A DNA stretch of 60,292 nt from positions 48,688,237 through 48,748,528 of the forward strand of contig NC_068994.1 in the NCBI RefSeq assembly GCF_001194135.2, in the 5' to 3' direction. Position 1 is the stretch's first letter; every line of letters begins with the position of its first letter. The notes under the pieces were generated by a model. The model did no database searches. It worked only from the letters and a program-made list of their open reading frames with translations, and was not told where the DNA came from. The translations under genes were made by a program, and so were the position numbers. Source of the stretch: Octopus bimaculoides. Its lineage: Eukaryota. This document shows positions 1,258 to 58,052 of the stretch, one piece after another.

Positions 1258-1537
1258 TCAGAACATGGATGCTCTGTTAGAGAAAACTATACTGTGGCAG
1301 TTAGCATGAGAGAAATTCTCATATTGGCTTTTGGTGCAGAATGCATACATGTTTATATTACTAGTGGGGAGATAAATCCCAGCCAGGGCCACCAGATCAT
1401 GTGATTTCAACCTTCCTTGGTCTTGTTGATGATGGACACTTGACCACTGGAGATAGTGGCAGTTCATCTCTCTGCCAGTGATATTTAGTATAACAATGCC
1501 AGGCACTGGTGTTGCGATTAACCAGTGAGTCTGTCTT

Positions 1538-2086: not shown

Positions 2087-2869
2087 NNNNNNNNNNNNNN
2101 NNNNNNNNNNNNNNNNNNNNNNNNNNNNNNNNNNNNNNNNNNNNNNNNNNNNNNNNNNNNNNNNNNNNNNNNNNNNNNNNNNNNNNNNNNNNNNNNNNNN
2201 NNNNNNNNNNNNNNNNNNNNNNNNNNNNNNNNNNNNNNNNNNNNNNNNNNNNNNNNNNNNNNNNNNNNNNNNNNNNNNNNNNNNNNNNNNNNNNNNNNNN
2301 NNNNNNNNNNNNNNNNNNNNNNNNNNNNNNNNNNNNNNNNNNNNNNNNNNNNNNNNNNNNNNNNNNNNNNNNNNNNNNNNNNNNNNNNNNNNNNNNNNNN
2401 NNNNNNNNNNNNNNNNNNNNNNNNNNNNNNNNNNNNNNNNNNNNNNNNNNNNNNNNNNNNNNNNNNNNNNNNNNNNNNNNNNNNNNNNNNNNNNNNNNNN
2501 NNNNNNNNNNNNNNNNNNNNNNNNNNNNNNNNNNNNNNNNNNNNNNNNNNNNNNNNNNNNNNNNNNNNNNNNNNNNNNNNNNNNNNNNNNNNNNNNNNNN
2601 NNNNNNNNNNNNNNNNNNNNNNNNNNNNNNNNNNNNNNNNNNNNNNNNNNNNNNNNNNNNNNNNNNNNNNNNNNNNNNNNNNNNNNNNNNNNNNNNNNNN
2701 NNNNNNNNNNNNNNNNNNNNNNNNNNNNNNNNNNNNNNNNNNNNNNNNNNNNNNNNNNNNNNNNNNNNNNNNNNNNNNNNNNNNNNNNNNNNNNNNNNNN
2801 NNNNNNNNNNNNNNNNNNNNNNNNNNNNNNNNNNNNNNNNNNNNNNNNNNNNNNNNNNNNNNNNNNNNN
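2087..2869. other. Assembly gap (N); further gaps at 7573-8003, 27054-27526, 35070-35653, 45125-45134, 48429-48854 and 59813-59822
   Basis: Runs of N, mostly abutting (AT)n tracts; none falls inside the ALLC-like coding span 9361-21507. Confidence 1.
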
Positions 2870-3154: not shown

Positions 3155-3520
3155 AATGAGAGTAGTAGTAGTAGTAGTAGCAGCAGCAGCAGCACTAGTA
3201 GTAGTGGCGGTAGTAGTCATGGTGGTGGTGGTGGTGGTAGTTGTAGTAGTAGTAATAGTAGCAGTAGTGTTTGTTGTTGTTGTTGTAGTAGAAGTAGTGG
3301 TGGTGGCAGTAGTAGTCGTGGTGGTGGTGGTGGATGGTGTTGGCTGTAGTAGTAGTAGTAGTAGTAGTAATATTAGCAGTAGTATTTGTTGTTATTCTAG
3401 TAGTAGATATAGTGGTAGTGGTGGTAGTAGTCATGGTGGTGGTGGCAGTGGTTATAGTAGTAGTATTTGTTGTAGTAGTAGTAGTAGTAGTAGTAGTAGT
3501 TTAACACCACCACCACCACC
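3155..3520. repeat. (AGT/GGT/AGC)n compound microsatellite
   Basis: Direct reading; yields poly-S/V/T pseudo-ORFs. Confidence 0.9.
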
Positions 3521-3619: not shown

Positions 3620-3945
3620 TTCACTTCTTCTTTTGGGTGTCCTCCCTTCTCAACCCAACCCTCCCAATCTCCTCCTCCATGTTTTCCTCAGTCTACCTCG
3701 CTTTTGTGGTCCATTTACCTCAAACTCAAGCACCCTCCTCAACACATGCCCATACCACCACACTCTATTCGTCCTTGACAGTCATTCCACCAATTCCTTC
3801 AACCCCAGCATCCCCATCATGTCCTCAGTTCTCCTCTTATCAAACAGTTTCACTCCACACATTTCTCTCACCACTGCTCTCTCTGTCCTTCTCAAAATTG
3901 CCATCTCTCTCTCCCTCAGACACCATGTCTCACTTCTGCCTTCTT
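3620..3945 (-). mobile_element. RTE-clade LINE 3' ORF fragment
   Basis: ETWCLREREMAILRRTERAVVREMCGVKLFDKRRTEDMMGMLGL is the typical post-RT C-terminal region of RTE LINEs; degraded. Confidence 0.8.
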
Positions 3946-4472
3946 GAGTTAGTTTTCCACCACATTTCTTAAAAATCATGGTAGAGGCCTTGGTCTTGGG
4001 ACCACTCATGTCTAGAAACTCAGGTTGGGGGTAAGCAAGGGCATGCCCCCTGTAGAAAATTCAGCTCTGAGAAAGTCTCATTATAGAGCTGTTATTTCTT
4101 ACAAATCAAATGAATGATAAAACATGACCATTTTCTCAAATTCAGAATTGTGAAAGCATGGAATAAACCAGCTGTGTCAGTTTTTGAATTTACAGGCACG
4201 GAATCCTTTGAAAATACCATTTTTCTTGAAATTCCCCAACATTATTCTTACCTTTTATTTATTTCAGTTATTTGACTGTGGCCATGCTGGGCACTGCTTG
4301 AAAGGTTTTAATTGAACAAATCAACGCCCATGACTTGTCTTTTTTAAGCCTGTCACTCATTCTATCGGTCTCTTTTGCTGAACCATCAAGTTACAGGGAT
4401 GTAAATATACCAACACCGGTTGTCAAGTGGTGGTGGGAGACAAAGACAGACACACAAACATAGATATATATA

Positions 4473-4520
<48 letters not shown>

Positions 4521-6359
4521 ATGGGCTTCTTTCAGTTTCTGACTACCAAATCAACAAGGCTTTGGTTGGCCTAAGGCTATAGCAGAAGACACTTGCCCAA
4601 GGTGCCACACAGTAAGATTGAACCTGGAGCCACATGGTTGGGAAGCAAGCTTCTTACCACACAGCCATGCTTACACCCTTTCTTCTTTAGAGCTCTTTTA
4701 CTGTTCATTTACTCTATTCCCCTATGTACCCTGCATGCAGTTTTGGGTTTTATTTCTGTCTTTCTATACCAGACTTATTGCTGCTTTTTGTCTCCTCTGT
4801 TATTCTTTTCCAACAAGTTGTAGTGCACCTGAGCACTGTATACAATAAGCTCTTTATTGTCATTATGACTTTTTTTTTTATTGACATATGGCTAAGAAGT
4901 TCAAACACAGAAAACAGAAACAGATAGCTAGGCTGACATAGATAAGTGGCTATATTGATCCATAATGTTATTTCAAATGGCTGCAGACAGCACAGCTGTG
5001 TTCAGATTCTTTACAGTATAAAATATAACATTTTATAAACTTTATGCACAGGGGAATCCGGATAAAGCTATGCCTATCTCCAGTTGAAACATTTGCAAGT
5101 TGTAGGTAGCAAATAAATAAAATGAAGCTACTACACCCCATCATCAAATTCAGTGGGTATTTTTTTATGTGGGTATGTGCATGTGTGCCTGAATCTGTGT
5201 GTGTGTGTGTGTGCATGCACATATGCAAGCATGGCGGTGTGATTAAGAAGCTTGCTTCCCAACCATGTAGTTTCAGGTTCAGTCCCACTGCCCAGCACCT
5301 TGGACAAGTGTCTTCTATATTCCAGGTTAACCAAAGAGTGAAAGAAGCCCATATGTGTATAAACAATGCATGTGTGTGTGTATGTACAATTATATTGACA
5401 TGATGATGGCTGTAAATGAGCATCACCATAGAAACAATGTTGTTCATTTTTAGTGTCTTCTATGGTAAAGCATTTCTGGCCCTGAGAAATATTACCTTGC
5501 TTGGAAACAACTAAGAATTGGCAACAGGAAGGGCACCCAGCCATAGAAAATTTGTCTCTACAAATTCCGCCTGACCCAGGGACATTAAATGATGAAACGT
5601 GTGTGTGAATGAGTAGTATAAGATGTAGACTCAGAGAATCATGTGGCTATCACAGAAACTTCCTCTTAAATATGCATAATTTCTTCAATACCATCATTAA
5701 TACATAACGAAGGTTGCAAAACAGCTGTAATCCTATAGAAGTCACATGGTTAAATAACTATGTATTCATCTCCCATTATCTGCTGTCTTTATGTTTATAT
5801 ATATATATGAGTTTGGAGGGATAATATTATCCAGGCAGATACTGTATTGGCTCTCAGTTAAGGGCTTCTATTTGTTGCTAGTCACTCTGTGAATCCTTCC
5901 AATGGGTAATTCTATATACGCTTCGCTGGACAGTAAAAATTGTCAGGAGTATATTACCAAAATATATATAACCTCACACTAAAGAGGTTTGTGCGTTATG
6001 ATTTGTATTTAAAGTCCATGAAAATGGCACATGCATGATTTGAACAGTAAACACCAAAAGTGAACAACTGAGATCTGAAATCGCGGTCTTAATCTAGGGG
6101 ACATAACTCCATAATTATATATATTCAACAATCGTTCCTTAATATTGGGTTAAATGGTAGTTATACTAAAAACATTATCCTGTTATCTCCCTTTCTGTTA
6201 CTAAGCATAAAACTACTTCGTACACCAGCCTCAAACTTCTTTGAAATCCTTAGAATAGGGATCGAGATATCATATACACATAAATACAAACTATTTTTTT
6301 TTTTTTTTTTTTTTTTTTTACAATTCCTAATAATATAATAGGATTTTTTAAACATCAAA

Positions 6360-7410: not shown

Positions 7411-9360
7411 TTTTCAACAGGAAGTTGAAAAAGAGTTCATAACTCCAACTAAAAACATTTGTCTCCCCTTACACACACTTCCTGTTTTGACACCAAATTT
7501 CCTGCTTAACACAAACTTTTAACCCTTTTTTTAAACCTAACAAAACTCTCAACTCTCATGCATCCTTATTTTNNNNNNNNNNNNNNNNNNNNNNNNNNNN
7601 NNNNNNNNNNNNNNNNNNNNNNNNNNNNNNNNNNNNNNNNNNNNNNNNNNNNNNNNNNNNNNNNNNNNNNNNNNNNNNNNNNNNNNNNNNNNNNNNNNNN
7701 NNNNNNNNNNNNNNNNNNNNNNNNNNNNNNNNNNNNNNNNNNNNNNNNNNNNNNNNNNNNNNNNNNNNNNNNNNNNNNNNNNNNNNNNNNNNNNNNNNNN
7801 NNNNNNNNNNNNNNNNNNNNNNNNNNNNNNNNNNNNNNNNNNNNNNNNNNNNNNNNNNNNNNNNNNNNNNNNNNNNNNNNNNNNNNNNNNNNNNNNNNNN
7901 NNNNNNNNNNNNNNNNNNNNNNNNNNNNNNNNNNNNNNNNNNNNNNNNNNNNNNNNNNNNNNNNNNNNNNNNNNNNNNNNNNNNNNNNNNNNNNNNNNNN
8001 NNNATATATATATATATATATAGCATAGAGTGTAATGATGACTTGGTATTGATTCCTGAGAGTTAAGCGAACTGAAGCAGTATAAAATAAAGTGATTAAT
8101 CCAGAAACAGAAGAGAAAATCCATGGCATGTCTGAATTCAGAACACATGGACAATTAGTCTCATGATTCAACCATCTTGTCTAAACGATTGTATGCAAAT
8201 ACAATGATGGCGACCCTGCATGGCTAACAAATATTTCTTCAATTTGTGCGTTCAAGTCCTTTTGTGTATCTAAAAACATACATCGTTCTTGTGAGAAATG
8301 CTTGGGGATTAGGTTAAAACAACCAAATTAATCAGAAATCACATAATCAGAAACTAGACTTTTTGAATTGCCATTCTCCTTGCATTCTGTTATAAAATCT
8401 AGGGTGGCAGTGTCCTGTGCCTGCCTCTTTAGAGATAAAGGGGTAAAGATTCCCTCTGGTCACGAATGACCATGGGATTGCACCTAGAAAGTTCACAAGT
8501 CCAAGCAAGGTTGTTTATGGAAGACCACCAGTCGTCCATGCATACCAGCCTCCCCTCTCCACACCACTGGTTATCCAAGGGAAAGGCAAAGGTTGATACA
8601 GCTTGGTACCAGTGATGTCACTGCTCATTTCTACAGCTGAGTGAACTGGAGCAACATGAAATAAAGTGTCTTGCTCAAGAATACAACACAGCCTGGTCTG
8701 GGAATCAAACTCACAACCTTATGATTGTAAGCCCAATCCTCTAACCACCGAGTCATGCTTCTTCACATTATTTAAGTGTATATACTTTATAAAAACTCTG
8801 TTGCATACATGAGGATTATATTAAATAAAAAACTGAGATCACTGTGTGTAAACGTATTCCTTGTTGTGGAAATTGTTTTATGCTACATCACACAGCTTAT
8901 GAAATATTCCATGGTGTCTATATAAACATACTCAGTAGAGCTATGGAGCTTGTTTTTACCTCGTTGATTTTACAATGCACTACACAGCATAGGAAATAAT
9001 CCAGTATGTGTACATAAGCATATGCTGTTTTACTATGAAATGAATTTGGTTGTAAAAACCCAATTTAACAAAGGGAGTTGAGGGGTTTAAGCCCTTCAAT
9101 AAATATATATCATTCACTGATGAAGGATTTCCACAGTGACTGACTATAAAAATTAAATTTCGGTATCAGATGGTAAGCAGCAAGGATGAAGTTGTCTGTA
9201 GTATCATGGAATTATGGGTCTTGCACCATAATAATTTAAGCAAAAATAAAATATATAAAAAAAAGTTTTTAAAAAATAACAAAAAATTTGCAAAGGTAGG
9301 AGGGATGAAAATGGAAGAGAAAGCAGAGAAAATTAGGAGGAAGACAAGAGAGAACTGTTT

Positions 9361-9662
9361 TTAAAGACGGCACAAGTGTTGTGTTGACTTGTGACCCCAG
9401 ATGTGGACATGTTCTAGCAATGAATCCATGGAGGATTCCAGGCGATGCTCCACTGGGGACGGCGATGGGAGCAACAAAGTCAGACGAAGACGGATATGAG
9501 ATCTGACAATATGGGAAGCAATTTGAATGGTATGCGTTGAGCAAGGGAGGAGACCTGTTGATGAGACCAAGACGAACCATGGGACCTGATCACTGCACTT
9601 TGTTGTTTCGCTCTTGAACGATTTCTCTACCATTTTCTCTTGTTCTGCTGACATAGAACAAG
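9361..9662 (-). CDS. ALLC: ALLC-like terminal coding exon 11 (A-CSMSAEQEK...WFVLVSSTGLLPCSTH...HIRLRLTLLLP...HVHIWGHKSTQHLCRL*)
   Basis: Acceptor ttgcttttctcttgcag, phase 1, TAA at 9363-9361; matches ORF-track 9361..9654; homologous to the WKPLLPVTKLSPNQSH and THARLTIVP regions. Confidence 0.88.
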
Positions 9663-12600
9663 CTGCAAGAGAAAAGCAAATCTAAAACATTATCTCCAAA
9701 CAAGAAATGTGCATAATTACATATATATGTATATATGAGGTGAAGTCAGAAATTATCCGCACTTTCACAATAACATATCTTTGCCTTCGTGCGGGTGACA
9801 CATAAAAGCACCTACTACACTCTCTGAGTGGTTGGCGTTAGGAAGGGCATCCAGCTGTAGAAACTCTGCCAAATCAGATTGGAGCCTGGTGTAGCCTTTG
9901 GGCTCCACCAGTCCTCAGTCAAATCGTCCAACCCATGCTAGCATGGAAAGTGGACGTTAAACGATGATGATGATGATGATGATGATATTGCCTTCTGCAC
10001 AGGCGTGCTTATAGTTGGTACTACTGTGGTCATGTGATCAAAGTTTGAGCCTGATCACACCATTTTTCTTTCTGGCTTTACAGTGTAAGCAGAGGCCACT
10101 CCACTAGCAATTTGCACCAAAGAACAAAGAGCAGTGATCCGAGAGACAGTAATGGTGAACAGGTTCACCATTACCATCTCTCGAGCTTGCTGAATCTTCT
10201 CATCAGTGGTGGACGTTAACAGGCGTCCTGCTCCCTCTTCGTGCGTCACGCTTGTCCAGTCACTTATAAACTTCTTGATCCACTCATACACATGGTAATG
10301 CACTGTTCTGCCCACTCCAGCTTCCACCTTCTCAATACACACATAAATAGATACACACATGCAAAACACACACAGATGCACACAAACACACACTACATAC
10401 GATGCTAACAAACATAATGAAGAACATCATTGTGCAATGAAGGAAAACTCTTACCATCAATTGTAAGGAATGCAAGGAATTTGCCATGAAACTTCCCTGT
10501 TTTCAGTTCAACCTGAAATGGAAATAAAGACTTGGTTAAAACTTAATATTTATCTTTTACTTGTTTCAGTCATTAGACTGCGTCCATGCTGGGAGGCATT
10601 TTAGTCAAGCGAATTTGAGTCCAAGTACTAATTTTTCTCTGTTTTTAAAGCCTGGTACTTATTCTATAACTCTCCCTTGCCAATTTTCTAACTTACAGGG
10701 ATGTAAACACACCAACACCAGTTGTGAAGCAGCAGTGGGGGACGAACACACACAACAAGCTCGTTCAGTTTTTATTTACTAAATCCACTTACAAGGCTTT
10801 AGTCGGCCTGAGACTATAGTAGAAGACACCTGCCCAAGGTGCCACTCAGTGGGACTGGACCAAGAATCATGTGGCTGGGAAGCAAGCTTCTTACCACACA
10901 GCCACACCTGCACCTATATATACATACACACACACACACATGACAGGCGTCTTTCAGTTTCCAGCCATCAAATCCACTCACAAGACTTGTTGATCCAAGG
11001 CTATAGTAGAAAACACTTGCCCAAGGTGACACACAGTGAGACTTGAACTTGGAACCATGTGGATTGGGAATCAAACTTCTTACAACACAGCCTCACCCAC
11101 CTGGGCGCTGTTGTGGTGTGGTGAGCATGATACAGAGAGGGTGCTATAGCCACTGACCAGCTGTAGAGGCTTTGTTTATTTTCAAAAGAATACTAGGATA
11201 GGCTACACTGAATACAGTCCAAACACACACATGCACACACACACACACACATGTGCACAAGCCTTCCTATATGCTCATGCATACATATACAATCAAACAA
11301 AATTAAATACAGAGTTTCTTTGCTTACTTTTGATATATTACCTGGGCAGGCCAACCTGTATATGGCCCAAACCTCTTGCCAATTTCCTGGAAAAAAAAAA
11401 CAACAGCAATAATTATAATCTTTTCTACAATAGGCACAAGGCCTGACATTTGGGGGAGGGGGCTAGTTGATTATATTGACCCCCCCCCCCAGTGTTTCAC
11501 TGGTACTTTATTTATCAACCCCGAAAGGATGAAAGGTAAAGTTGACCTCAGCAGAATTTGAACTCTGAACGTACTGGAGGACAAACACAGACACAAAGAC
11601 ACTCACATATACAAGAAAAAAGTGACTGAGGGAAAAGATCAGGTTCAGAGTTTAGAATTTAGAGAAAAATGTGAAAATAATAATAGATCAAAGTGAAGAA
11701 AAAAAGAAAAAAAGCATATGTTTAACTTTGAAGTGAATCAGTGAATTCAATGTTGAAAACATGAGTTTAAGCAGAAACCTTCAGATGCTCACAAATGCAA
11801 TGCAAAAAAATCCCATATATCAAAACAAAATTAACATACCTGCCTTGAAGATGTTCTGAGATTCACAAATTGGTAACTGGTCATTCTAGAATATAGAAGA
11901 GTAAAATATAAAAGAGTTATTGTAATCAGATTTCGTACTGAAACACAAAAAAATCATACATACAGACACATGTGCACACACTCACACACACACATATGCA
12001 TGCATAATTGTGCATGCAACTGACAAATTGTGCTAGCACCTAAATATTGCCTAACCTTTTAGTGTTTAAACCAGCCATATCCGGCCCAAATATTCTACAT
12101 GTTTTATATTCAAACTGGCCATATCTAGCCTCTCACACCTAACCTACAGTGACATTCTAAAAATAAAAACAATCATATCACTGAAACCTCAAAGCTATAA
12201 CATAATGCATGATTAATTCAAAACAATTTGAGTGAAAAAGTATTACATTTAACAGAGTAATCTGAACACTAAAAGGCTAAAGATACAAGGAAGTTATGGT
12301 TATAATGCCTTTCTCTTTGGCATCCACAAGAAGCATATTTAAAACTTGGTTAAATAAAACAGGATAAAACGTATTTGTAAAGAATGTCAGCTTACCTCCC
12401 TTGAAAACCTCTGGTTAGTGCTCAATTGACTGTCAGTGGCAGAGGGCAAGTGGATGGTTAGAGCCAGTTGTTTCATTGTAGGACAACTTGCAGCCAGGCA
12501 CATACTGCCATTCATTAGAGATAGTAAGTCAAGTAGCTGTAAGTTGATGGAGAAGTAGGTTAAGGACAGAGTGCAATTAATGATGGAAGATTCTAGAAAG

Positions 12601-14290
12601 GAGATGAGAGAGACAAGCAGAATGACAAAACAAAACGGAACGTAGAAGTATAAAATAGTACTCTTTTACTTGTTTCAGTCATTTGACTGTGGCCATGCTG
12701 GAGCACCACCTTTAGTTGAGAAAATCGACCCCAGGACTTATTCTTTGTAAGCCTAGTACTTACAAATATATATTTTTTAATTTATATATTTTCCTAACAT
12801 TCAATTCTGATTGTTTTCTGTGAAAATTTTGCATATGCTATGTAAGCAGCCCATTTCTTTGTGCACATTCAGTGTAAATGACCCATTTCTTAGTACATAT
12901 TCAGTGCAGGTGACCTATATTCTTATGCATATTCAGTGCAAGTGACCTACGTATCTGTAGTTGTTTGGTTGCTCCAACTGAAGTTGTAGAATAGCTTCAA
13001 CTTGACTTCAAATTAGAATCCCTTTGGGAACAACTTGACCACAAAGACTGTGCCTAGTTTGGCAAGTTTGGCACAGCAAACCTGAATCCCATTTATAATA
13101 TAGTTCCAAGTTGAAAATGCTGTTTCACTGGAGACAACAATATATTTCTACATATTCTATGCAGATAACCCATATTCAGTGCAAGCTATTTATAGCTGGG
13201 TGCATATTCTGCACAAACACCCCATACTTGTAGCAAGCAGCCTATAATTGTTTGTACATATATATGTCATATTTGGAGACGGCAATTTGTTTTTTACCAA
13301 TAAACACATGCACTATTTATTTGATCTTCTCTACTTTTATTATTATCATTATTTCTTTTTTTTAAACGTAGAATGTAAAGACAGACAAAATTCTGTTAAG
13401 CATTTCTCCCGACATTGCTAACGTTTCTTATTTCTTTACTGCCCACAGGGGGCTACACACAGAGAGGACAGACAAATGGATTAAGTCGATTACATCGACC
13501 CCAGTGTGTAACTGGTACTTAATTTATCGACCCCGGAAGGATGAAAGGCAAAGTCGACCTCGGCGGAATTTGAACTCAGAACATAACGGCAGATGAAATA
13601 CCGCTAAGCATTTCGCCCGGTGTGCTAATGTTTCTGCTAGCTTGCCGCCTTTATTATTATCATTATTATTAGTGGATGGAGAGAGAGAGAGAGAAAGAGA
13701 GAGTGAGAGAGACACACACACACACATAGGCAGACAGACAGACAAAGAGAGAGGGGGTAGAGAGAGAGAGAGTAGCAGGGTAAAAGAAAGAGGAAGAGGG
13801 AAATTTCAGAAACCTGAGGAAAAAAGTTGGGAATAGAGAAAGGGTAAGAAAATTGAGAGAGAGAGAGATAAAAACTGTACTAAGTACATGAAGTATGAAC
13901 CAAAAGCAAACTGTTCTCACCTGATCACATAACACATGAGATAAATCAGGCCAAGGTTCACCATAAATGCGAAGACGTGCTATACCACAACCTGACAGAG
14001 AAGAAGGATATTCATTAAAAAGAAAAATATAGAATTATGGTGTAGTTCACAACACACACACACACACATTTTGTCACTGACCCAACAGGATTTTAGGCTG
14101 CCCAACCAATATGTTTACAAGTTTTATTGATATTTAGTGTATAAACAATATCCATGCATGCAGGATATTGGTTCAGTTCTACAATGTGGTTGGTACCGTC
14201 TGAAAGTGTCTTCCACTATAGTCCTAAGCCAACCAAAGCCTTGTGAGTGGATGTTGTGGACAGAAACTGAAAGAAGTCCACTTCATTTAT

Positions 14291-14321
<31 letters not shown>

Positions 14322-16471
14322 ACACACAAACGTGTATTATGTATATGTGTGTGTGTGTCAATCCTTGTCTTAAAAGCACATACTGTTAACAAACACCATA
14401 GCCATTATATTGCAAGTAATGACAAGTATCTAGGCTTGTATATCGCTCAGTTCTCAATACTCAGTTGCAGGCAGGTCACTTCACACAGCTAATGGCCTTT
14501 AGATGAAATACGAATTAAACACAAAAAACACTTTTTTTTTTGATTTCCCATGAAAACCTTAAATTTTCATGTTGACCGAATAAAAACCTTGACAGGTAAA
14601 CCTTGTCTATGTAAAGTCAACATTTGAGGCTGAGGCTAAATGTAAACTAATGAAACACAACATACCAGAAAACACATTAAGGCGTACATGTGTCCACGGC
14701 TTTTTGTGGGAGATTGCAAAGAAATTGTGACAACAGGCAAGGTAACCTGGTTCTAATGGGCTTGATGGTACTAATTCTTCCCATTTCTGGAAAATAAACA
14801 GAACAAGGAATGAAGGATAATGGAAGTGGTGGTAGTAGTAGTAGTGGTGTGGTAATTATTGTAGTAATGATGATGATGATGACGACGATAGTGGCAATAG
14901 CAGCAGTGGTGGTGATGGTGATGATGGAAGTGCAAGAGTCGTACAAGGAGAGGCTGAAAATTCCTGGCTTTGGGTAAAAGAAAATACAGGAGGATCAGTT
15001 AATTATGATCTTATTCAACATAGTCCCTGCCACTCAGATTCACACACTTATTGCAGTGGTCCTTCAGTATTTCTAAGCCCTGAAAAAGAACTTGGAAAGT
15101 TGGGCCTCCAGCCAAGCTTTTCGCGATACCCTTAAAGCCAAGAACTTTTCAGCACCCCTTGTATAGTATTGGCAGTAACGGTATTAGAAGGGATCACAAC
15201 ACTGTTGGGTCAGCTCTGATCAAGCAGACATACAATTAAAGGCAATCCAGCCATGAACATCCCATCTTTCATTCAGACAAACTATATTGAAAAATACATT
15301 ATTCAATGTCTCCCTTCTTGTTTGTTTTTTTTTTTTTAAAGACAACAGGATCTGAACTGAGGTAGATTTGGCTGCTATTGTTCATAGCAAACAAGAGTTA
15401 AATGACCACCTAGAGGCTTGTTTGTTGGTTAATCAGTGATGATGAGGAGGAAGAGGAGAATACAAGTGATGGAGATGCTGCTCGATTGGGAAACATTACA
15501 GGAATTACAGCAGTGATAATGACAGCAATAGTGGTTACAAGAGAAATGGTGGTGTGGTGTGGTGTGGTGTGGTGGGTGTTGATGATGGAGGTAAAAAGTT
15601 GTAAATAAATTAAGAAAAAAAAAGAAAAAGAAAGAACATTATTTACATTAGACGGATATCTGTCAAATGTAAATAATGTAAATAATTCCTCATCTCTTAA
15701 ATATAGAACTGTAAAAAGAGAGAAAAAATATAACAAAAAATATACCGTATTTGGTGAGATCTGACCAGATTCCAGAGCAGCCCCTTCAAAAGAGATTCGA
15801 CGGGCATGGTTTGCAATGAAATAGGATGTGTCTACTTCAACACCATGCAATATTCCAGGAACACCTAATAATAATAATAAAAAAAAACAAGAGAAAACAA
15901 ATAATATTTGTAGAGCATCTGGACACCAGAATGGTGTGGTTTAGAAATGTTTAAAAAACTTTTATCAAGAAGGCAGCGAGAGAGAGAGAGAGTGAGAAAA
16001 ATGGAAAAGATAAAGAAAAGCAGTATGAGAAGTGATGAAGAGAAAGGCAGAGAAGAGGTGACAAAATGATGGAGTCGGGGAGGGGAGGGGAAGAAAAGAA
16101 AGGGATGATGTAAGATGGAAGAGAAAGATGAAGAAAAGTGAAAATGAAGAAGGGATTAGGAGAGGCAAGAAAGAGAAATGGAGAGATGGGCTTAGAGGAC
16201 AGGAGATAATAACCATGAAATATTGTTCATAGATGATATCAGACAATGCAGGAGAGAAAAGCAACATGAGTAAATCACACTCACTCTAGACATAAAAAAA
16301 AAAAAAAATTACTACCACTAACCTAACTGTACAATGCACCAATTTGGCTCTCCGATATCAAATGCTTGCCAACCATCCATGGGTTGCTGGTCGAGATTCC
16401 TAATTCTGCTTTCCTTCCACTGAGGTTTTGCAGTCTGAGACAAAATATAGTTAATGTTATTATTAGAAACA

Positions 16472-16518
<47 letters not shown>

Positions 16519-17317
16519 AGGCATTGAAGTGGCAAAATTGTTTGAATTGACAAAACTTTTCCTGCAAGTTTCATCAAATACCATTCATAACTTTTGAATT
16601 ATTTTGCACACAGACGGACAGATGGACAAACCCACGCCGATGAAAACATAACCTCCTTCCTTGGTGGAGGTAATGATGACTATCATTATTATTATTATTA
16701 TTATTATTAAGATGGCATGCTGATAGAACTGTTAGAGCATTGAACATAATACTTAGTGGTATTTCTGGCTCTTTATGTTCTGAGTTCAGACTCTGCCAGG
16801 GGTGAATTTGCCTTTCATCTTTTCCTTCTATTTTTTTCCTAATATGACCTTCTTTTTTTGAATAAGCAATTTTAAAATTTGGTAAAAGAAAAAAAAAAAA
16901 AACCAAAAAAAAAAAACCCTCTACTCCACATTTACAGACAGTAGTGCCATTTTCCTATCTATTACCAAAGAGTCTATTACAAGAAAACTAGTTATTTCTC
17001 ACTGCAAGAACACATAAATTACAGGATAACAGGTGTTACCTTTAAGAGATTTCCCACGCTGTTAGCAATTTCACTGGTTGCATATTGGATTTTCCCACCA
17101 ATCTGAAACAGAAGCAAATAAAATAACTATTAAGATCTTCAACTTAAAATTATATGAGATGTTACAAGTGTTGTTATGTAGTTAAGAAGCTTGCTTCCTA
17201 AGCATGTGGTTTCAGGTTCAATCCGACTGTGTAACAGCTTGGGTAAATATTTTCTAATATGACCCTAGGTCAACCAAAGCCTTGAGTGAATTTGGTAGAT
17301 GGAATCTGAAAGAAGCC

Positions 17318-17372
<55 letters not shown>

Positions 17373-20300
17373 CACACATATATATATACACACATATATA
17401 TATATATGTGTATGTATATATATATATTCACACACATACACACTGGTACCACGTTAAAAGCACCCAGTACATCCTATGGAGTGGTTGGTATTAGGAAGGA
17501 CATCCAGCCATAGAAACCATGCCAAAACAGACAATGGACCCTGGTGTGGCCCTTGACCTCACTAGCTCCAGTCATGCCAGCATCCATCTAATCCATGCCA
17601 GCACAGAAAACAGATGTTAAATGATAATGGAAACTTGAAGGGGAGGAGTTAATTCACTAAATCAACACTAATAATTAACTTGTGCTTTATTTCAAAAGGA
17701 TGAAAAGGGAAAATGATAAAATGACCTCTGCAGAATTTGAACTCAGAATGTAAGAGTCAGAACAGGGCATTTTTCTCTGCCCCTCTATTGGTTCCCCCAA
17801 TCCATCGAGGTCAACTTTGCCTTTCATCCTTAAGAGGTGGACAAAAAGTACCAGTCAAATACGACGTAAATTTTATTGACTAACCCCCTCCCCATCAAAT
17901 CTGTAGCCTTTTTACTTCTGTTAGAAACGATTATTATTATCATAATGGCCCTTGTGGCCAATAAAGAAAGAATTATTATTTTGCTTAGTGTACGATAGGA
18001 GCAATTCAGTAAATTGTCTCCCTTGAAAAAACACGGGGGAGAGAAAAGACTATCTTCGCGTACCCTCGCCACGAGTGAACCGAGAAACTATAAAAAAGAA
18101 AAAAAAATCGGGCGCAGCGCACACATACACTAGTGATTCATCAATATCAATTATCAGGCAATTAACACACTAATTAACATGACAGAATATAATGTAAGCA
18201 GTTGACAAGTAAATTACTGAAGGGAAATTTAACCACACTAAAGACAAAAACGAAAAAAAAAAAGGTGCAAGGGAAATAACCGGGTTGTTACCAAAATATA
18301 GACCATGCCGTCAGCACCAAATCCACTCTGACCTAGCAATGTCCTTCATTTTTTAAATGGTGAAATGTAACTTGGGCAAGATTTGGCTGCTATTCCTAGA
18401 AATTCGGGGGAGGACATAGAGGTTCTCTTTTCGGCCCATGAATTGATTTATTTAATATCAGATAGCAATTCCCACTCAGATTGATGATGTCTTTCCTCAA
18501 CCTGCTGCAGATAACTGGGGAGTAATACAATTGACTTTAATATTCAAAGTGCTGCCCCGGCATGGCCATAGTGCTATGGCTATAAAGAATAGCAGAATCC
18601 TTAATAGTCACCATCATCATCATTTTAACATCTACTTTTCCATTCTTGCCTGGGTCAGACAAGAGTATGTCAGGCAGAGTTTTCTATAGCCGATTGTTTT
18701 TCTTATCACTAACCCCTGACTGTTTCTCAATTAAATGTGGTAATAATGTCTCACTCTATCAATCCGCAAACAGTCCAGCCATGCTTACATGGAGAACTGG
18801 GAAAAGAAAAAAAAAACAATAAAAGAAGCCTTTTGATTACAAAAGTTGTGCAATATGTCAAGACATGTCAAGAAGCCCAATCATGCTTTCATAGTTGGCA
18901 GCAAGCAGTAAATAAACATAAAAATATAAAACTACAAAAAAAGTAGCAAACAAAAACAAAAAAAAAACATGAGCTGTCAACACTCAAAGAGACTTACGTT
19001 GATGATGTTGTTACACCTCGAGGTCACTTTTGTTTTGAGCAGATGTTATGATCAAAGATATTCCACCTATGACCATTCTGTTGTATTTTCAGGAATGTTT
19101 GTCAACTCTATAGACACAGGCGTGGCTGTGTGGTAAGAAGTTTAATTTCCAACTACATGGTTCTGGATTCAGTCCCAGTGTGGCACCTTGAGCAAGTGTC
19201 TTCTACTATAGCCTTGGGCCAACCAAAGCCTTGAGTGGATTTGGTAGACAGAAACTGATAGAAGCCCATCATACATACACACACATTATACCACATGGTT
19301 ACTACTCTAAGTATTTTCCAATATGCAAAACAAATTTTTCAGATCAAAATCTACAGCCCCAAATGGTAGATCAACTTATACACCAAGACACTGAAGGAGC
19401 AAAAATTTCATGTGAAATGTAGCAAGATTTGGAAAGATATGTTTACACTATATACTACATCGACTTGTATGATGGAAAATACAGTACTACAGCCATTATA
19501 TAACAACCCTTGGGCAAGGCATAGCTTACTACTGGCCTCAGCCTAATTGTTTCTGAGAGCAGATTAAAGGTTGACTTCATAGCATCAAGTTGTCAAAAAA
19601 AAAAAAAAAGAAAAAAAATGTCATAATGGGGTTTCACATGTTACACTTGTTTTTATTTTTTTATTTTTGTTTTTCATTTAGTGGTTTAATCAGAGGTGGA
19701 AAAGTATATAACCTTAAGACAGAGTTAATGAATCTAGTGAAGAAAATGAAGGGAAAAAAAACTAATTAATAGGGACCTGGTCTGAACCTTTTCAACAGAA
19801 CAAATTCTGCTAAAGACACTCAAGAGCCTGGTGGTGGTGTTAAAACTAAATGACACACACACACACACACACACACACTTATTTACTGATGGGAAAAAAA
19901 GGAAACAAAATAAAATGGGTTTGGTAGGTTTTAGAAAATACCATATTTAATTCCCATTTTAAGGAGTTTCAGTTGTCACAACAGGCTGAACAGAGTGAAT
20001 GACTATATTAAAGCAGCTTTTAGTAAGCAACAGTTGGTACTATCTTCAAAACAATATCACTCCTACACAATCCAGACAAGCATTTAACAAAGACAGATAC
20101 TTGCAAATGCACACAGACACGCACAATATAAAACAGCTGCAACATTAATGCAAACACTAAAGTCTTTAGTCTATGCCTGGCTGCCACTATTTTGCAATGA
20201 ATCACAATGGATTGATCACAGTCTGTGTTTGCCAGCCTGCTCTGTTGACTCCCAACACATGCACACATCATGCATACATGCCAGGGATTTATGTAATCGA

Positions 20301-21494
20301 CCTCTCAGCGATGAAATACAGAGACAACCCCTAGCACGATTTGAACTCAGAGTGCAGGAAAGAGGGAGGGAACTAAATACTGCAAGGCATTTTATGCAAC
20401 AGCCAACCATTTCTTATTTCTTTATTGCCCACAAGGGGCTAAACATAAAGGGGACAAACAAGGACAGCCAAAGGGATTAAGTCGATTACATCGATCGCAG
20501 TATGCCACTGGTACTTAATTTATCGACCCCGAAAGGATGAAAGGCAAAGTCGACCTTGGCGGAATTTGAACTCAAAACGTAACGGCAGACGAAATATCGC
20601 TAAGTATTTCGCCTGGTGTGCTAACGTTTCTGCCACTCAACTGCCAATAAAAGAACAGTCTTTAATCAATACAAAAAGTAGATTGAATAACAATACAGAA
20701 ACGGACATTGCATGCTCTGATTGACACATTGTACTCTTACTTGGTGAACAACTCAGCATGCCAGAGTGTGAGAGTAAAAACACAGTATCAGCAGAGTCTA
20801 GCGTATAGGATATCCATGTCATAAGAACCAATATACTGTTAATCCCAATCTGCTAATCTACTGATAGTGTCTACACCACGAGTTCTGCTCAGTTTAAATG
20901 GTTCTAACCATAAATATTCCTCAACACTAATAAAGATTTCTAACAAAGGCAAAAGACCACACATATCAACCTCAGTACTTGACTGGTATTTAGAGAGGAT
21001 GGTATTTGCTGATACCCTCAAGATGAAAGGCAAAGTGGACCTTGGTGGGATTTGAACTCAGAATGTGAAGAGTTAGAATGAAGCACAATGCATTTTGTCC
21101 AGCTCTCTAATGGCTCTGTCAACTACCTCCTTCAGTAATGGTAATGGTGATAATGGTTTCAAATTTTGGTACAAGGCCAGCAATTCTAAGAGAGGGGGTA
21201 GATTGACTACATTGACCCCTTATACACAATGAAACCACCAAACTACAGAGCAAACTGTCTACAAGAAGAATATTCTTCCACCAGCCTTGGACGACCTGAA
21301 AAGTATAAGGGACATCACTCTTCTGCCTCCAACTAAACCATAACATTTTTTTTTAATTTAAGGAAAAAAAGAAAAACAAATGAAATAAGCACCTTCTCAG
21401 AAGAAAGTTCTGGAAATGAAAGGAAATCAGGGCTACAGCCATTCTGTTCTTCTGTCAAATGCCTGGTGCTGACTTTTCTCACCTCAGCCTCCAT
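9361..21494 (-). CDS. ALLC: Allantoicase-like gene, spliced CDS of 11 coding exons (join complement 21494-21483, 17102-17040, 16434-16323, 15864-15746, 14786-14666, 13991-13921, 12536-12396, 11885-11840, 11386-11328, 10512-10455, 9662-9361), 367 aa, divergent and probably non-catalytic
   Basis: Exon lengths 12+63+112+119+121+71+141+46+59+58+302=1104 nt. All introns are GT..AG, phases match, and there is no internal stop. Translation: MEAEIGGKIQYATSEIANSVGNLLKTAKPQWKESRIRNLDQQPMDGWQAFDIGEPNWCIVQLGVPGILHGVEVDTSYFIANHARRISFEGAALESGQISPNTKWEELVPSSPLEPGYLACCHNFFAISHKKPWTHVRLNVFSGCGIARLRIYGEPWPDLSHVLCDQLLDLLSLMNGSMCLAASCPTMKQLALTIHLPSATDSQLSTNQRFSRENDQLPICESQNIFKAGNWQEVWAIYRLACPGNISKVELKTGKFHGKFLAFLTIDACSMSAEQEKMVEKSFKSETTKCSDQVPWFVLVSSTGLLPCSTHTIQIASHIVRSHIRLRLTLLLPSPSPVEHRLESSMDSLLEHVHIWGHKSTQHLCRL. 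It is colinear with recalled allantoicase motifs ([63 protein letters not shown]). Orthologue versus paralogue status is not determined. Confidence 0.9.
9735..10330. mobile_element. Rearranged mariner relic in the last ALLC-like intron, with a nested SINE
   Basis: TIR-like gaggtgaagtcagaaattatccgcact at ~9738; plus-strand N-terminal piece (PLAICTKEQ.., ~10100-10140); inverted piece on minus VYEWIKKF...SVTHEEGAGRLLTSTTDEKIQQAREMVM. Confidence 0.75.
9789..9987 (+). mobile_element. 5'-truncated retroposon with (GAT)n tail (family C) and 8-bp target-site duplication
   Basis: ttgccttc at 9781-9788 and 9988-9995 flanks the insert; same family at ~25-218, 28300-28950 and 33915-34275. Confidence 0.85.
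10455..10512 (-). CDS. ALLC: ALLC-like exon 10 (VELKTGKFHGKFLAFLTID-A)
   Basis: Acceptor ctttatttccatttcag, donor ATG|gtaaga, 58 nt, phase 0-1; aligns ungapped to [20 protein letters not shown]. Confidence 0.9.
11328..11386 (-). CDS. ALLC: ALLC-like exon 9 (G-NWQEVWAIYRLACPGNISK)
   Basis: Acceptor gttttttttttccag, donor AAA|gtaagc, 59 nt, phase 1-0; WAIYRLACPG matches [10 protein letters not shown]. Confidence 0.9.
11840..11885 (-). CDS. ALLC: ALLC-like exon 8 (NDQLPICESQNIFKA-G)
   Basis: Acceptor tcttctatattctag, donor CAG|gtatgt, 46 nt, phase 0-1; bridges exons 7 and 9 in frame. Confidence 0.8.
12055..12276. mobile_element. piggyBac-like MITE (12-bp TIR ccttttagtgtt, degenerate TTAA flanks)
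   Basis: Left ctaa-ccttttagtgttt, right gaacactaaaagg-ctaa; lies in the intron between exons 7 and 8. Confidence 0.55.
12396..12536 (-). CDS. ALLC: ALLC-like exon 7 (LLDLLSLMNGSMCLAAS...NQRFSRE), start of repeat 2
   Basis: Acceptor ctccatcaacttacag, donor GAG|gtaagc, 141 nt, phase 0-0; DLLSLMNGSMCL matches a DLVAIAFGGVCV-type segment. Confidence 0.88.
12830..13260 (+). repeat. Degenerate ~32-bp minisatellite in intron 6, split by a ~190-bp spacer
   Basis: Unit approx. catattcagtgcaagtgacctatattcttatg repeated ~4x (12830-12950) and again ~13150-13260. Confidence 0.6.
13921..13991 (-). CDS. ALLC: ALLC-like exon 6 (G-CGIARLRIYGEPWPDLSHVLCDQ)
   Basis: Acceptor ccttcttctctgtcag, donor CAG|gtgaga, 71 nt, phase 1-0; GIARLRIYG motif. 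Confidence 0.95.
14666..14786 (-). CDS. ALLC: ALLC-like exon 5 (KWEELVP...HNFF...WTHVRLNVFS-G)
   Basis: Acceptor ctgtttattttccag, donor CTG|gtatgt, 121 nt, phase 0-1; HNFF and WTHVRLN are allantoicase hallmarks. Confidence 0.95.
14944..15161 (+). mobile_element. Mariner-type MITE, ~28-bp imperfect TIRs, TA target duplication
   Basis: ta-caaggagaggctgaaaattcctggcttt ... aaagccaagaacttttcagcaccccttg-ta. Confidence 0.8.
15746..15864 (-). CDS. ALLC: ALLC-like exon 4 (G-VPGILHGVEVDTSYFIANHARRISFEGAALESGQISPNT)
   Basis: Acceptor ttattattattag, donor ACG|gtatat, 119 nt, phase 1-0; homologous to GVIRGFDVDxSYFTGxYAPRVSI. The donor position is less certain than the acceptor. Confidence 0.88.
16323..16434 (-). 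CDS. ALLC: ALLC-like exon 3 (TAKPQW...PMDGWQAFDIGEPNWCIVQL-G)
   Basis: Acceptor atattttgtctcag, donor TAG|gttagt, 112 nt, phase 0-1; contains MDGW and NWCIVQLG. Confidence 0.92.
16545..16672 (+). mobile_element. Helentron/DINE-1-like 3' end (cagacggacagatggaca microsatellite + acctcc..ggaggt stem)
   Basis: Motif aaaacataacctccttccttggtggaggtaa preceded by a GACA/GACG repeat; assignment from recalled element architecture only. Confidence 0.35.
17040..17102 (-). CDS. ALLC: ALLC-like exon 2 (IGGKIQYATSEIANSVGNLLK)
   Basis: Acceptor tttgcttctgtttcag, donor AAG|gtaaca, 63 nt, phase 0-0; aligns to [21 protein letters not shown]-type segment. Confidence 0.9.

Positions 21495-50957: not shown

Positions 50958-51009
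<52 letters not shown>

Positions 51010-58003: not shown

Positions 58004-58052
<49 letters not shown>

What the first reader, a model, noticed from the sequence alone, without database searches (positions are those of the whole stretch)
9361..21494. Intact 11-exon allantoicase homologue whose signature motifs are eroded in both repeats: candidate pseudo-enzyme
Seen: a stop-free 367-aa spliced frame with 10 canonical introns, which argues against a decaying pseudogene. Seen versus recalled family consensus, repeat 1: ATDD(W/F)FA->ATSEIAN, MDGWETRR->MDGWQAFD (16380-16357), FxGN->FIAN, FPDGG->FSGCG. Repeat 2: DGWETARR->DSQLSTNQR, DTxxFxGNFP->KTGKFHGKFL, PDGGVSRLR->PSPSPVEHRLESSMDSLLEHVH. Established: allantoicase is two tandem galactose-binding-like jelly-roll repeats (Pfam PF03561), and these acidic/Arg motifs form the conserved inter-domain cleft. 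Inference: the beta-strand scaffold (WCIVQLG, WTHVRLN, IARLRIYG, WAIYRLA) is maintained while catalysis is lost, implying a repurposed binding or scaffold protein in an ammonotelic animal.
Basis: partly seen in the sequence, partly recalled or inferred. Interest (0 to 1): 0.85.

Follow-up and report, generated by a model that had tools for sequence, protein, structure and literature searches.

The report
Octopus allantoicase gene turned probable pseudo-enzyme
This is the intact, already annotated "allantoicase" gene of Octopus bimaculoides, and octopuses, argonauts and cuttlefish keep it under purifying selection even though it has lost about half of the residues every working allantoicase shares, so it probably no longer degrades allantoate.

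Summary
On the minus strand, 21494-9361, lies an 11-exon gene with 10 GT-AG introns and an open frame. The product is identical to XP_014790089.1 "allantoicase [Octopus bimaculoides]".

It is a true orthologue of animal allantoicase. Eight of its 10 introns sit at the same alignment column and phase as in Mytilus, and it groups with mollusc sequences in a tree.

It keeps only 33 of 64 columns that are at least 95% conserved in 173 canonical allantoicases; those keep 53-64. It scores 182.6 bits against the TIGR02961 equivalog model, whose cut-off is 277.9.

O. sinensis, Argonauta hians, Sepia esculenta (transcripts) and a second decapodiform share the erosion, so it predates the coleoid split. 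dN/dS is 0.15-0.22, against 0.06 for a bivalve control. That rules out a pseudogene but shows relaxed constraint. The former signature positions are now among the least conserved. New coleoid-invariant residues have appeared, and a peroxisome-targeting-like C-terminus (-CRL, -ARL, -PKL) survives.

Best reading: a selectively maintained, probably peroxisomal, non-allantoicase protein, most likely a pseudo-enzyme. Loss of catalysis is inferred, not shown. Interest is moderate.

The parts
9361..21494 (-). Whole gene, ATG to stop. It is 11 exons, 10 GT-AG introns, and encodes 397 aa identical to XP_014790089.1 'allantoicase [Octopus bimaculoides]'.
21393..21494 (-). Exon 1 (102 nt), aa 1-34: the start codon and the N-terminal lead-in '...PDFLSFPELSSEK'.
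17040..17102 (-). Exon 2 (63 nt), aa 35-55. It contains ATSEIAN (17081-17061) in place of the canonical ATDDxFA.
16323..16434 (-). Exon 3 (112 nt). It contains MDGWQAFD (16380-16357) in place of MDGWETRR; the glutamate and all three arginines are lost.
15746..15864 (-). Exon 4 (119 nt). It contains VDTSYFIAN, with FIAN (15820-15809) replacing FTGN. It corresponds to two Mytilus exons (96+89 nt), so 66 nt and one intron have been lost here.
14666..14786 (-). Exon 5 (121 nt). It holds the retained scaffold strands, including WTHVRLN (14696-14676).
13921..13991 (-). Exon 6 (71 nt). It contains (S)GCGIARLRIYG; the canonical PDGG turn is now SGCG, and its Asp is Gly in all five coleoids.
12396..12536 (-). 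Exon 7 (141 nt), the start of repeat 2. It contains the coleoid-invariant SCPxM (12488-12474) in place of SDxHF, and DSQLSTNQR (12434-12408) in place of DGWETARR.
11840..11885 (-). Exon 8 (46 nt), NDQLPICESQNIFKA. Without it the exon 7/9 junction is out of frame.
11328..11386 (-). Exon 9 (59 nt), the scaffold strand GNWQEVWAIYRLACPGNISK.
10455..10512 (-). Exon 10 (58 nt), VELKTGKFHGKFLAFLTID. KTGKFHGKFL (10503-10474) replaces DTNHFKGNFP.
9364..9662 (-). Exon 11 (299 nt). It contains the coleoid-invariant TGLLPC (9558-9541), a roughly 13-aa insertion, and MDSLLEHVHIWG (9429-9394) in place of PDGGISRLRLWG. The C-terminal CRL (9372-9364) fits the PTS1 pattern [SAC][KRH][LM]. The TAA stop is at 9363-9361.

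Best explanation
This is the single orthologue of animal allantoicase (ALLC) in Octopus bimaculoides.

Shown:
- The gene is intact.
- It descends vertically from the canonical enzyme gene, with shared intron positions and a mollusc-nested position in the tree.
- It still encodes two PF03561 repeats.
- It has evolved under purifying selection in both octopods and decapodiforms.

Also shown: before the octopod/decapodiform split it lost a large block of near-universal allantoicase residues. These include the Glu/Arg residues of both DGWETRR motifs, the Asp of the first PDGG turn and the whole second PDGG..R.R motif, plus parts of the DTxxFxGN motifs. Those positions now drift freely. A new set of coleoid-invariant residues has become fixed, and the C-terminus still looks like a peroxisomal targeting signal.

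Inferred: the protein no longer hydrolyses allantoate. It is most likely imported into peroxisomes through its C-terminal tripeptide and is kept for a non-catalytic role that depends on the double jelly-roll scaffold, such as ligand binding, oligomer formation or acting as a partner subunit. In short, it is a pseudo-enzyme derived from allantoicase.
For: Gene integrity and identity.

Family membership at domain level: Pfam PF03561 scores 100.9 bits for repeat 1 and 38.8 bits for repeat 2, against a cut-off of 27.

Fold: with the canonical-rich alignment AF2 gives pLDDT 84.4 and pTM 0.84. The best PDB matches are yeast allantoicase 1o59 and 1sg3, with target-normalised TM-scores of 0.70-0.73.

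Orthology: 8 of 10 introns are at the same alignment column and phase as in Mytilus trossulus. In a neighbour-joining tree the five coleoid sequences form one clade inside the bivalve cluster, on a long stem. Their distance to Nematostella is 1.33-1.55, against 0.61 for Mytilus.

Erosion:
- The coleoids retain 32-37 of 64 near-universal columns, canonical sequences 53-64, and the bat 'probable inactive allantoicase' 56.
- 19 columns are lost in all five coleoids.
- TIGR02961 equivalog scores are octopus 182.6, Argonauta 167.3 and Sepia 208.8, against a cut-off of 277.9. Mytilus scores 457.3 and Myotis 413.1.

Selection:
- Nei-Gojobori dN/dS is 0.224 for O. bimaculoides vs O. sinensis (14 nonsynonymous and 17 synonymous changes; binomial p = 7e-5 against neutrality), 0.21 for Octopus vs Argonauta and 0.149 for Sepia vs the second decapodiform. 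Both repeats are constrained.
- The CDS is 97.4% identical between the two Octopus species, against roughly 85-89% in alignable intron segments (approximate).

Former signature sites are now unconstrained: identity at the 19 lost columns is 6/18 (Octopus vs Argonauta) and 7/18 (Sepia vs the other decapodiform), against 51% and 68% elsewhere. Only 1 of the 19 is invariant among the five.

New constraint: 23 residues are invariant in the coleoids but occur in under 10% of canonical sequences.

C-termini are CRL, CRL, ARL, PKL and PKL. Of 121 mostly metazoan canonical proteins, 83 end in [SAC][KRH][LM]. Zebrafish Allc is described as a peroxisomal PTS1 protein (PMC8919083).

Expression: the Sepia esculenta orthologue occurs as an intron-less ORF on contigs from at least 8 RNA-seq runs.
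Against: - There is no enzymatic, localisation or interaction data.
- As far as I know the catalytic residues of allantoicase have not been defined experimentally, so calling the active site lost rests only on conservation.
- dN/dS is 2.5-3.5 times higher than in a canonical bivalve pair at similar dS (0.06). Constraint is therefore weak, and deep dS values are saturated.
- No full-length transcript of the Octopus gene itself was found in the collection (one search lists genome records only).
- The confident structure model depends on canonical homologues. A coleoid-only alignment gave pLDDT 44.7.
- CRL and PKL are only pattern matches to PTS1.
- I did not test whether coleoids keep or lack the other ureide-pathway genes.
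Confidence: 0.6

Rival explanations
1. It is still a working allantoicase, or still acts on ureidoglycolate. Its active site has been remodelled and the 'universal' residues are dispensable.
For: Purifying selection is present and a PTS1-like tail is retained in the compartment where the pathway runs in fish. Repeat 1 still keeps DGW, VDT, H165/R167 and ARLR. One otherwise canonical transcript of unknown species (P0093) lacks the Glu of both DGWET motifs yet keeps 58 of 64 columns.
Against: 31 of 64 near-universal columns are lost, and 19 of them are lost in all five coleoids. Those positions now vary freely instead of settling on a new consensus. The protein fails the TIGR02961 equivalog cut-off by about 95 bits. 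Repeat 2 matches only the central part of the Pfam profile, at 38.8 bits.
Confidence: 0.13
2. It is a neofunctionalised enzyme. The scaffold is reused for a different substrate or chemistry, carried out by the new coleoid-specific residues.
For: 23 residues invariant in coleoids are rare in canonical sequences. They include two new cysteines (C214 in SCPxM and C338 in TGLLPC) that replace canonical Asp and His. Selection acts on both repeats.
Against: No recognisable catalytic motif of any other family was found; Pfam and NCBIfam report only allantoicase. Overall constraint is weak for an enzyme. The new invariant residues could equally serve binding or folding.
Confidence: 0.17
3. It is a decaying or recently dead pseudogene, or a transcribed relic.
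For: The sequence has diverged strongly from canonical allantoicases (about 31-35% identity, while Mytilus is 55-60% identical to fish and cnidarian enzymes). No exact full-length Octopus transcript was found in the collection.
Against: The 397-aa frame and all 20 splice sites are intact. The same 11-exon structure is open in O. sinensis and in Argonauta hians, whose dS from Octopus is about 1.5. dN/dS is 0.15-0.22, and neutrality is rejected even for the closest pair. Sepia expresses a full-length ORF.
Confidence: 0.03
4. It is a gene-model artefact: exons of a degenerate relic stitched together by eye or by a gene predictor.
For: My first 10-exon draft was out of frame at the exon 7/9 junction. 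Alternative isoforms are annotated in O. vulgaris and O. sinensis (333, 376 and 394 aa).
Against: The missing 46-nt exon was found by homology and restores the frame with canonical splice sites. Exon lengths are identical in O. sinensis and, apart from exons 7 and 11, in Argonauta. The intron positions match Mytilus. The colinear Sepia mRNA contigs validate the exon order and junctions at protein level.
Confidence: 0.02

Closest known systems
Canonical allantoicase / allantoate amidinohydrolase (EC 3.5.3.4; yeast Dal2 PDB 1SG3/1O59; zebrafish Allc; bivalve allantoicases; NCBIfam TIGR02961)
   Same: It has the two tandem PF03561 repeats. The modelled double jelly-roll best matches 1o59/1sg3. 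It has the same length class (about 390-400 aa). Its intron positions are shared with the Mytilus gene. It has a PTS1-like C-terminus like most metazoan members.
   Different: It keeps only 33 of 64 near-universal columns. Both DGWET(R)R motifs, the FTGN/FKGN motifs and both PDGG turns are altered. It scores 182.6 bits against the 277.9-bit equivalog cut-off. It is about 31-35% identical to other animal allantoicases, which are 55-60% identical to one another across phyla.
Amniote ALLC ('probable inactive allantoicase' of placentals and reptiles)
   Same: This is also an allantoicase gene retained after the enzymatic role is thought to be gone. [quoted passage not shown]
   Different: The mammalian protein is barely eroded. 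Myotis keeps 56 of 64 columns and scores 413 bits on TIGR02961, so its inactivity is not visible in the sequence. The coleoid protein has lost about half of the columns. The two cases arose independently.
Coleoid orthologues: O. sinensis XP_029645498.1, O. vulgaris CAI9732908.1, Argonauta hians GAB1604260.1, and Sepia esculenta and one further decapodiform transcript (Logan contigs)
   Same: They share the eroded motifs, the exon structure (octopods) and the coleoid-specific invariant residues. They are 97%, 55-57%, 40-42% and 39-40% identical to the window protein.
   Different: The decapodiform proteins are slightly less eroded: DGWET, FPGGG and STD are still present and 35-37 of 64 columns are kept. 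They end in PKL rather than CRL or ARL. Argonauta carries an acidic/Gly-rich insertion where the second DGWET motif used to be.

Membership tests
Allantoicase-repeat protein family (Pfam PF03561), homology level | Two tandem PF03561 repeats, each above the gathering score of 27 bits | tested here: met
   Repeat 1 (aa 1-192) scores 100.9 bits over profile positions 1-154. Repeat 2 (aa 193-397) scores 38.8 bits but covers only profile positions 50-139.
Allantoicase-repeat protein family (Pfam PF03561), homology level | Double jelly-roll fold as in yeast allantoicase (1SG3/1O59) | tested here: inconclusive
   With a 72-sequence alignment AF2 gives pLDDT 84.4, and the best PDB matches are 1o59/1sg3 with target-normalised TM-scores of 0.70-0.73. 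With coleoid sequences only, pLDDT is 44.7, although the beta-strands fall at the same positions. The confident fold is therefore borrowed from canonical homologues.
Allantoicase-repeat protein family (Pfam PF03561), homology level | Vertical descent from the animal ALLC gene (orthology) | tested here: met
   8 of 10 introns are at the same alignment column and phase as in Mytilus trossulus; the other two have the same phase and lie in the badly aligned region. The coleoid clade nests among molluscs in the NJ tree. No canonical cephalopod paralogue appeared among the top 120 relatives of the Mytilus enzyme. That search was not exhaustive.
Functional allantoicase, EC 3.5.3.4 (NCBIfam TIGR02961 equivalog) | Score at or above the curated equivalog cut-off of 277.9 bits | tested here: not met
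   The window protein scores 182.6 bits, Argonauta 167.3 and Sepia 208.8. The controls pass: Mytilus 457.3 and Myotis 413.1.
Functional allantoicase, EC 3.5.3.4 (NCBIfam TIGR02961 equivalog) | Near-universal signature residues (DxxFA, GKxMDGWETRRxR, DTxxFTGN, PDGG..R in repeat 1; GWET.R, DTxxFxGN.P, PDGG..R.R in repeat 2) | tested here: not met
   33 of 64 columns conserved at 95% or more are retained, against 53-64 in 173 canonical sequences. 19 columns are lost in all five coleoids.
Functional allantoicase, EC 3.5.3.4 (NCBIfam TIGR02961 equivalog) | Hydrolysis of allantoate to ureidoglycolate and urea | not testable with these tools
   This needs a recombinant-protein assay. No paper on cephalopod allantoicase was found.
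Functional allantoicase, EC 3.5.3.4 (NCBIfam TIGR02961 equivalog) | Peroxisomal targeting by a C-terminal PTS1 (metazoan members) | tested here: inconclusive
   The C-terminal CRL fits [SAC][KRH][LM], as do 83 of 121 canonical animal proteins (SKL in 71). Argonauta ends in ARL, and the decapodiforms end in PKL, which is non-canonical. This is a pattern match only; import was not tested.
Processed or unitary pseudogene | Frame disruption or lost splice sites | tested here: not met
   There is no stop or frameshift and all 10 introns are GT-AG. The same holds in O. sinensis and Argonauta.
Processed or unitary pseudogene | Neutral evolution (dN/dS about 1) | tested here: not met
   dN/dS is 0.15-0.22 in three independent comparisons. 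Neutrality is rejected at p = 7e-5 for the closest pair.
Pseudo-enzyme (catalytically dead homologue under selection) | Loss of residues required for catalysis together with evidence of selective maintenance | tested here: inconclusive
   Selective maintenance is shown, and massive loss of family-invariant residues is shown. Which residues are catalytic is not established, and activity was not measured.

The most novel reading that the evidence does not exclude
Before octopods and decapodiforms diverged, coleoid cephalopods converted the peroxisomal purine-catabolic enzyme allantoicase into a non-catalytic protein, and every sampled lineage has kept it since. The old substrate-site residues are free to drift. 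A new invariant set, including SCPxM, GK, TGLLPC and two new cysteines replacing canonical Asp and His, defines a new binding surface on the double jelly-roll. This would be a lineage-defining pseudo-enzyme with an unknown peroxisomal partner or ligand.
Probability: 0.4. Interest if true: 0.6.

Novelty: new variant of a known kind. Interest (0 to 1): 0.5.

Why it matters
Three consequences follow if the reading is right.

1. Databases name this protein "allantoicase" or "allantoate amidinohydrolase" in every sequenced coleoid. Metabolic reconstructions of cephalopod nitrogen and purine metabolism that rely on that name would then be wrong.

2. It gives a second, independent and much clearer case, after amniote ALLC, of an allantoicase gene outliving its presumed enzymatic role. 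Here the loss is visible in the sequence and shared across coleoids. That makes it a good system for asking what a double jelly-roll allantoicase scaffold does when it is not an enzyme.

3. The coleoid-specific invariant residues give concrete mutagenesis targets.

The finding does not open a new category. Pseudo-enzymes derived from metabolic enzymes are common.

Tried and rejected
- A first 10-exon draft built from the visible homologous segments could not be joined in frame between 'RFSRE' and 'GNWQEVW' with canonical sites, which looked like a frameshift. tblastn with the O. sinensis protein then revealed a 46-nt exon at 11885-11840 that restores the frame.
I therefore could not look for O. 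bimaculoides transcripts. The cluster listing shows only genome records for the Octopus proteins.
- Literature searches found nothing relevant on allantoicase with cephalopod, octopus or pseudoenzyme, on urate oxidase with O. bimaculoides, or on ammonotely with uricase. The yeast structure paper (PMID 15020593) is not held, so I could not verify the proposed substrate pocket.
- Model coordinates are not exposed, so I could not map lost versus kept residues in 3D.
- AF2 on a coleoid-only alignment was uninformative (pLDDT 44.7).
- The species behind P0353 (SRR27666077) and P0093 (SRR6473829) could not be identified.
- The rest of the window gave no tRNA and no Rfam family. Seven of the longer, non-repetitive open frames outside the gene's exons gave no significant Pfam hit.
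Full report
**What is in the window.** The region 9361-21494 holds a minus-strand gene in AT-rich, repeat-laden sequence. I enumerated GT/AG sites around each homologous open segment. I then anchored the model with tblastn of the closest annotated relative. The result is 11 exons: 21494-21393, 17102-17040, 16434-16323, 15864-15746, 14786-14666, 13991-13921, 12536-12396, 11885-11840, 11386-11328, 10512-10455 and 9662-9364, with a TAA stop at 9363-9361. All ten introns are GT...AG, the CDS is 1191 nt and the product is 397 aa. No assembly gap lies inside the gene. An exact-sequence look-up shows the product is XP_014790089.1 / A0A0L8FGC5, "allantoicase [Octopus bimaculoides]". The window is therefore O. 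bimaculoides, and the gene already carries an automatic enzyme name.

**The motif erosion is real and far beyond chance.** All quoted motifs are at the stated places. I aligned the protein with 173 full-length canonical allantoicases from bacteria, oomycetes and many animal phyla. In that alignment, 64 columns are at least 95% conserved. Canonical sequences keep 53-64 of them (median 64). The octopus protein keeps 33.
- The losses include D and FA of ATDDxFA, GK, and the E and three R of MDGWETRRxR.
- They also include T and G of FTGN, P, D and G of the first PDGG, and G, W, E and R of the second DGWETxR.
- In repeat 2 they include D, N and P of DTxxFxGNxP and almost all of the second PDGG..R.R.
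- The columns kept in all five coleoids are mostly Gly, Trp, Leu and Phe.
- Pfam still recognises both repeats, at 100.9 and 38.8 bits against a cut-off of 27.
- The protein fails NCBI's isofunctional allantoicase model TIGR02961, scoring 182.6 bits against a cut-off of 277.9. Mytilus (457.3) and even a bat "probable inactive allantoicase" (413.1) pass.

**It is the orthologue of the enzyme gene, not a retrocopy or stray paralogue.** I re-derived exon maps from genome records for O. sinensis and Argonauta hians. Both show the same 11 exons, with identical lengths except for exons 7 and 11 in Argonauta. Eight of the ten octopus introns sit at the same alignment column and phase as in the Mytilus trossulus gene. 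The other two share phase and lie in the badly aligned eroded stretch. Mytilus has one extra intron, inside a segment that octopus has deleted. A search with the Mytilus enzyme returned canonical copies from bivalves, a brachiopod, a nemertean, an annelid, echinoderms, amphioxus, crustaceans, a priapulid, a cnidarian and many vertebrates at 55-70% identity. No cephalopod was among the best 120. So there is no sign of a second, canonical copy in the annotated Octopus proteomes, although that search was not exhaustive.

**The erosion is old and shared.** An exhaustive HMMER search of cluster representatives found one further close relative, P0192 (403 aa, E = 2e-84). It occurs as an uninterrupted ORF on 1.3-1.8 kb contigs from at least eight RNA-seq runs. 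Three of those runs are named in Sepia esculenta transcriptome papers (PMC10141105, PMC10571815, PMC9538352). A second decapodiform transcript, P0353, is 69% identical to it; its species is not identified. All five coleoid proteins are eroded, keeping 32-37 of 64 columns, and 19 columns are lost in every one. They form one clade nested among bivalves on a long stem. Their distance to Nematostella is 1.33-1.55, against 0.61 for Mytilus. The change therefore predates the octopod/decapodiform split. From general knowledge that split is of the order of a quarter of a billion years old; I did not date it here.

**It is not a pseudogene, but constraint is relaxed.** Nei-Gojobori estimates give dN/dS = 0.224 for O. 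bimaculoides vs O. sinensis (17 synonymous and 14 nonsynonymous changes; p = 7e-5 against neutral expectation). They give 0.21 for Octopus vs Argonauta (dS about 1.5, saturating) and 0.149 for the two decapodiforms (dS 1.31). Both repeats give similar values. A control pair of canonical mytilid allantoicase transcripts at comparable dS (1.29) gives 0.06. The coleoid gene is therefore maintained, but it evolves about 2.5-3.5 times faster at replacement sites. Alignable intron segments between the two Octopus species are roughly 85-89% identical, against 97.4% for the CDS (approximate).

**What selection now preserves.** At the 19 formerly universal columns lost in all coleoids, identity within coleoids is below background. 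It is 6/18 against 51% elsewhere for Octopus vs Argonauta, and 7/18 against 68% elsewhere for the decapodiform pair. Only one of the 19 is invariant among the five: the PDGG Asp, now Gly. This pattern fits abandonment of the old site rather than retuning. Conversely, 23 residues are invariant in coleoids yet present in under 10% of canonical sequences. Examples are C214-P215-x-M217 (canonical D-A-x-F), G284-K285 (canonical N-H), F293, and G334, L336 and C338 (canonical K, R, H). Something new is being conserved, mainly in repeat 2. The C-terminal tripeptide is CRL in both Octopus species, ARL in Argonauta and PKL in both decapodiforms. Of 121 canonical, mostly animal proteins, 83 end in [SAC][KRH][LM], usually SKL. 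Zebrafish Allc is described as a peroxisomal PTS1 protein (PMC8919083). Retention of an x-[KR]-L end on an otherwise variable tail suggests that peroxisomal import is still selected. This is inference from a pattern match.

**Structure.** With a 72-sequence alignment AF2 gives a confident two-domain beta model (pLDDT 84.4, pTM 0.84). Confidence is low at 230-248, where the second DGWET motif used to be, and it dips over residues 361-380, the stretch that holds the exon-11 insertion. The best PDB matches are the two yeast allantoicase entries (target-normalised TM-scores 0.70-0.73). Behind them come galactose-binding-like and discoidin tandem domains of neuropilins, coagulation factors and F-lectins, at much lower TM-scores. 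With only the five coleoid sequences the model is unreliable (pLDDT 44.7), although strands are predicted at the same positions. "Scaffold retained" is thus supported by the conservation pattern and secondary structure, but the confident 3D model is borrowed from canonical relatives.

**Interpretation.** The best-supported reading (confidence about 0.6) is a selectively maintained, probably peroxisomal, allantoicase-derived protein that no longer performs the allantoicase reaction, most likely a pseudo-enzyme. The rivals are a still-active allantoicase with a remodelled site (about 0.13), a neofunctionalised enzyme (about 0.17), a decaying pseudogene (about 0.03) and a model artefact (about 0.02). 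The main weakness is that catalytic residues of allantoicase are, to my knowledge, not experimentally defined, so loss of catalysis is inferred from conservation alone.

**Comparison with what is known.** At homology level the protein is a member of the PF03561 allantoicase family and the orthologue of animal ALLC. At function level it fails the two sequence-based criteria for the enzyme that could be tested. The closest precedent is amniote ALLC. PMC10120013 notes that Allc "with possibly a different function" was retained in reptiles and placentals after loss of the neighbouring pathway genes. That protein is hardly eroded (56 of 64 columns), so the coleoid case is independent and much more explicit in sequence. 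I found no paper on cephalopod allantoicase.

**Verdict.** This is a new variant of a known kind: a clade-wide eroded allantoicase that is currently misnamed as the enzyme. Interest is moderate at 0.5. It is a clean, testable pseudo-enzyme case with a clear annotation consequence, but it is not a new category.

Noticed in passing
window 2087-2869, 7573-8003, 27054-27526, 35070-35653, 45125-45134, 48429-48854, 59813-59822: There are seven runs of N (assembly gaps), several flanked by (AT)n or (TA)n microsatellites. They produce spurious long 'ORFs' and 'inverted repeats' in mechanical scans. None lies inside the gene.
   Followed up: yes
window 1021-1285, 11490-11585, 13415-13680, 17669-17764, 20411-20675, 21004-21133, 22059-22207, 35983-36247, 53574-53739, 54522-55000, 56016-56654, 59586-59681: An interspersed repeat family of about 230 nt looks like a SINE. 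It has at least 14 copies at 60-89% identity and a conserved core 'GGAATTTGAACTCAGAAC'. Five copies sit in introns of the allantoicase-like gene, and one site (56147-56642) is a 2.2-copy tandem of the 228-nt unit. ARAGORN and Rfam recognise nothing here.
   Followed up: partly
window 4255-4642, 10612-10879, 22720-22870, 25968-26127, 28985-29444, 30949-31237, 57799-58191: A second interspersed repeat family (about 200-390 nt, 60-89% identity), usually adjacent to (TA)n or (TG)n tracts. One copy lies in intron 9.
   Followed up: no
window 9786-9986 and 28454-28654: A 201-nt inverted pair that is 95% complementary. One arm lies in intron 10 of the gene and the other 18 kb away on the far side of the gene. 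It is probably two young copies of one mobile element in opposite orientation.
   Followed up: no
window 10058-10426 (-), 49595-49852 (-), 3785-4060 (-): These are open segments that by eye resemble transposase or reverse-transcriptase fragments, for example '...THEEGAGRLLTSTTDEKIQQAREMV' in intron 10. None gave a significant Pfam hit, so the resemblance is unconfirmed.
   Followed up: partly
window 53738-54331; also 3161-3500, 50958-51158: There are long imperfect trinucleotide-based arrays, including (ATAATGATGATG)n of about 52 copies and (AGT)n of 113 copies. They create long low-complexity 'ORFs' on both strands.
   Followed up: no
window exons 5-6 (14786-14666, 13991-13921); P0002, P0350, P0352: Annotated alternative isoforms exist in sister species. 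O. vulgaris X2 (333 aa) joins exon 4 directly to exon 7; this in-frame loss of 192 nt (64 aa) would remove the last strands of repeat 1. O. sinensis X2 is 376 aa and another O. vulgaris form is 394 aa. Whether these forms are really expressed was not checked.
   Followed up: partly
L012 (Logan SRR6473829), protein P0093: This is an otherwise canonical allantoicase transcript of unknown species, 60% identical to Mytilus and keeping 58 of 64 conserved columns. It has lost the Glu of both DGWET motifs (MDGWATRR, DGWLTAR) and has FTGD/FKGD in place of FTGN/FKGN. It may be an early stage of the same kind of erosion in another lineage.
   Followed up: partly
L002 16085-16274 (Argonauta hians exon 7): Argonauta carries a 16-residue Asp/Gly/Asn-rich insertion (DDDDDGDGGNGGNGGGG) exactly where the second DGWET motif used to be. 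This fits with that loop being free of its former constraint.
   Followed up: partly
L001 (O. sinensis locus) versus the window: The same 11-exon gene spans 27.7 kb in O. sinensis but 12.1 kb in O. bimaculoides. Intron size has changed more than two-fold between congeners whose CDSs are 97.4% identical.
   Followed up: no
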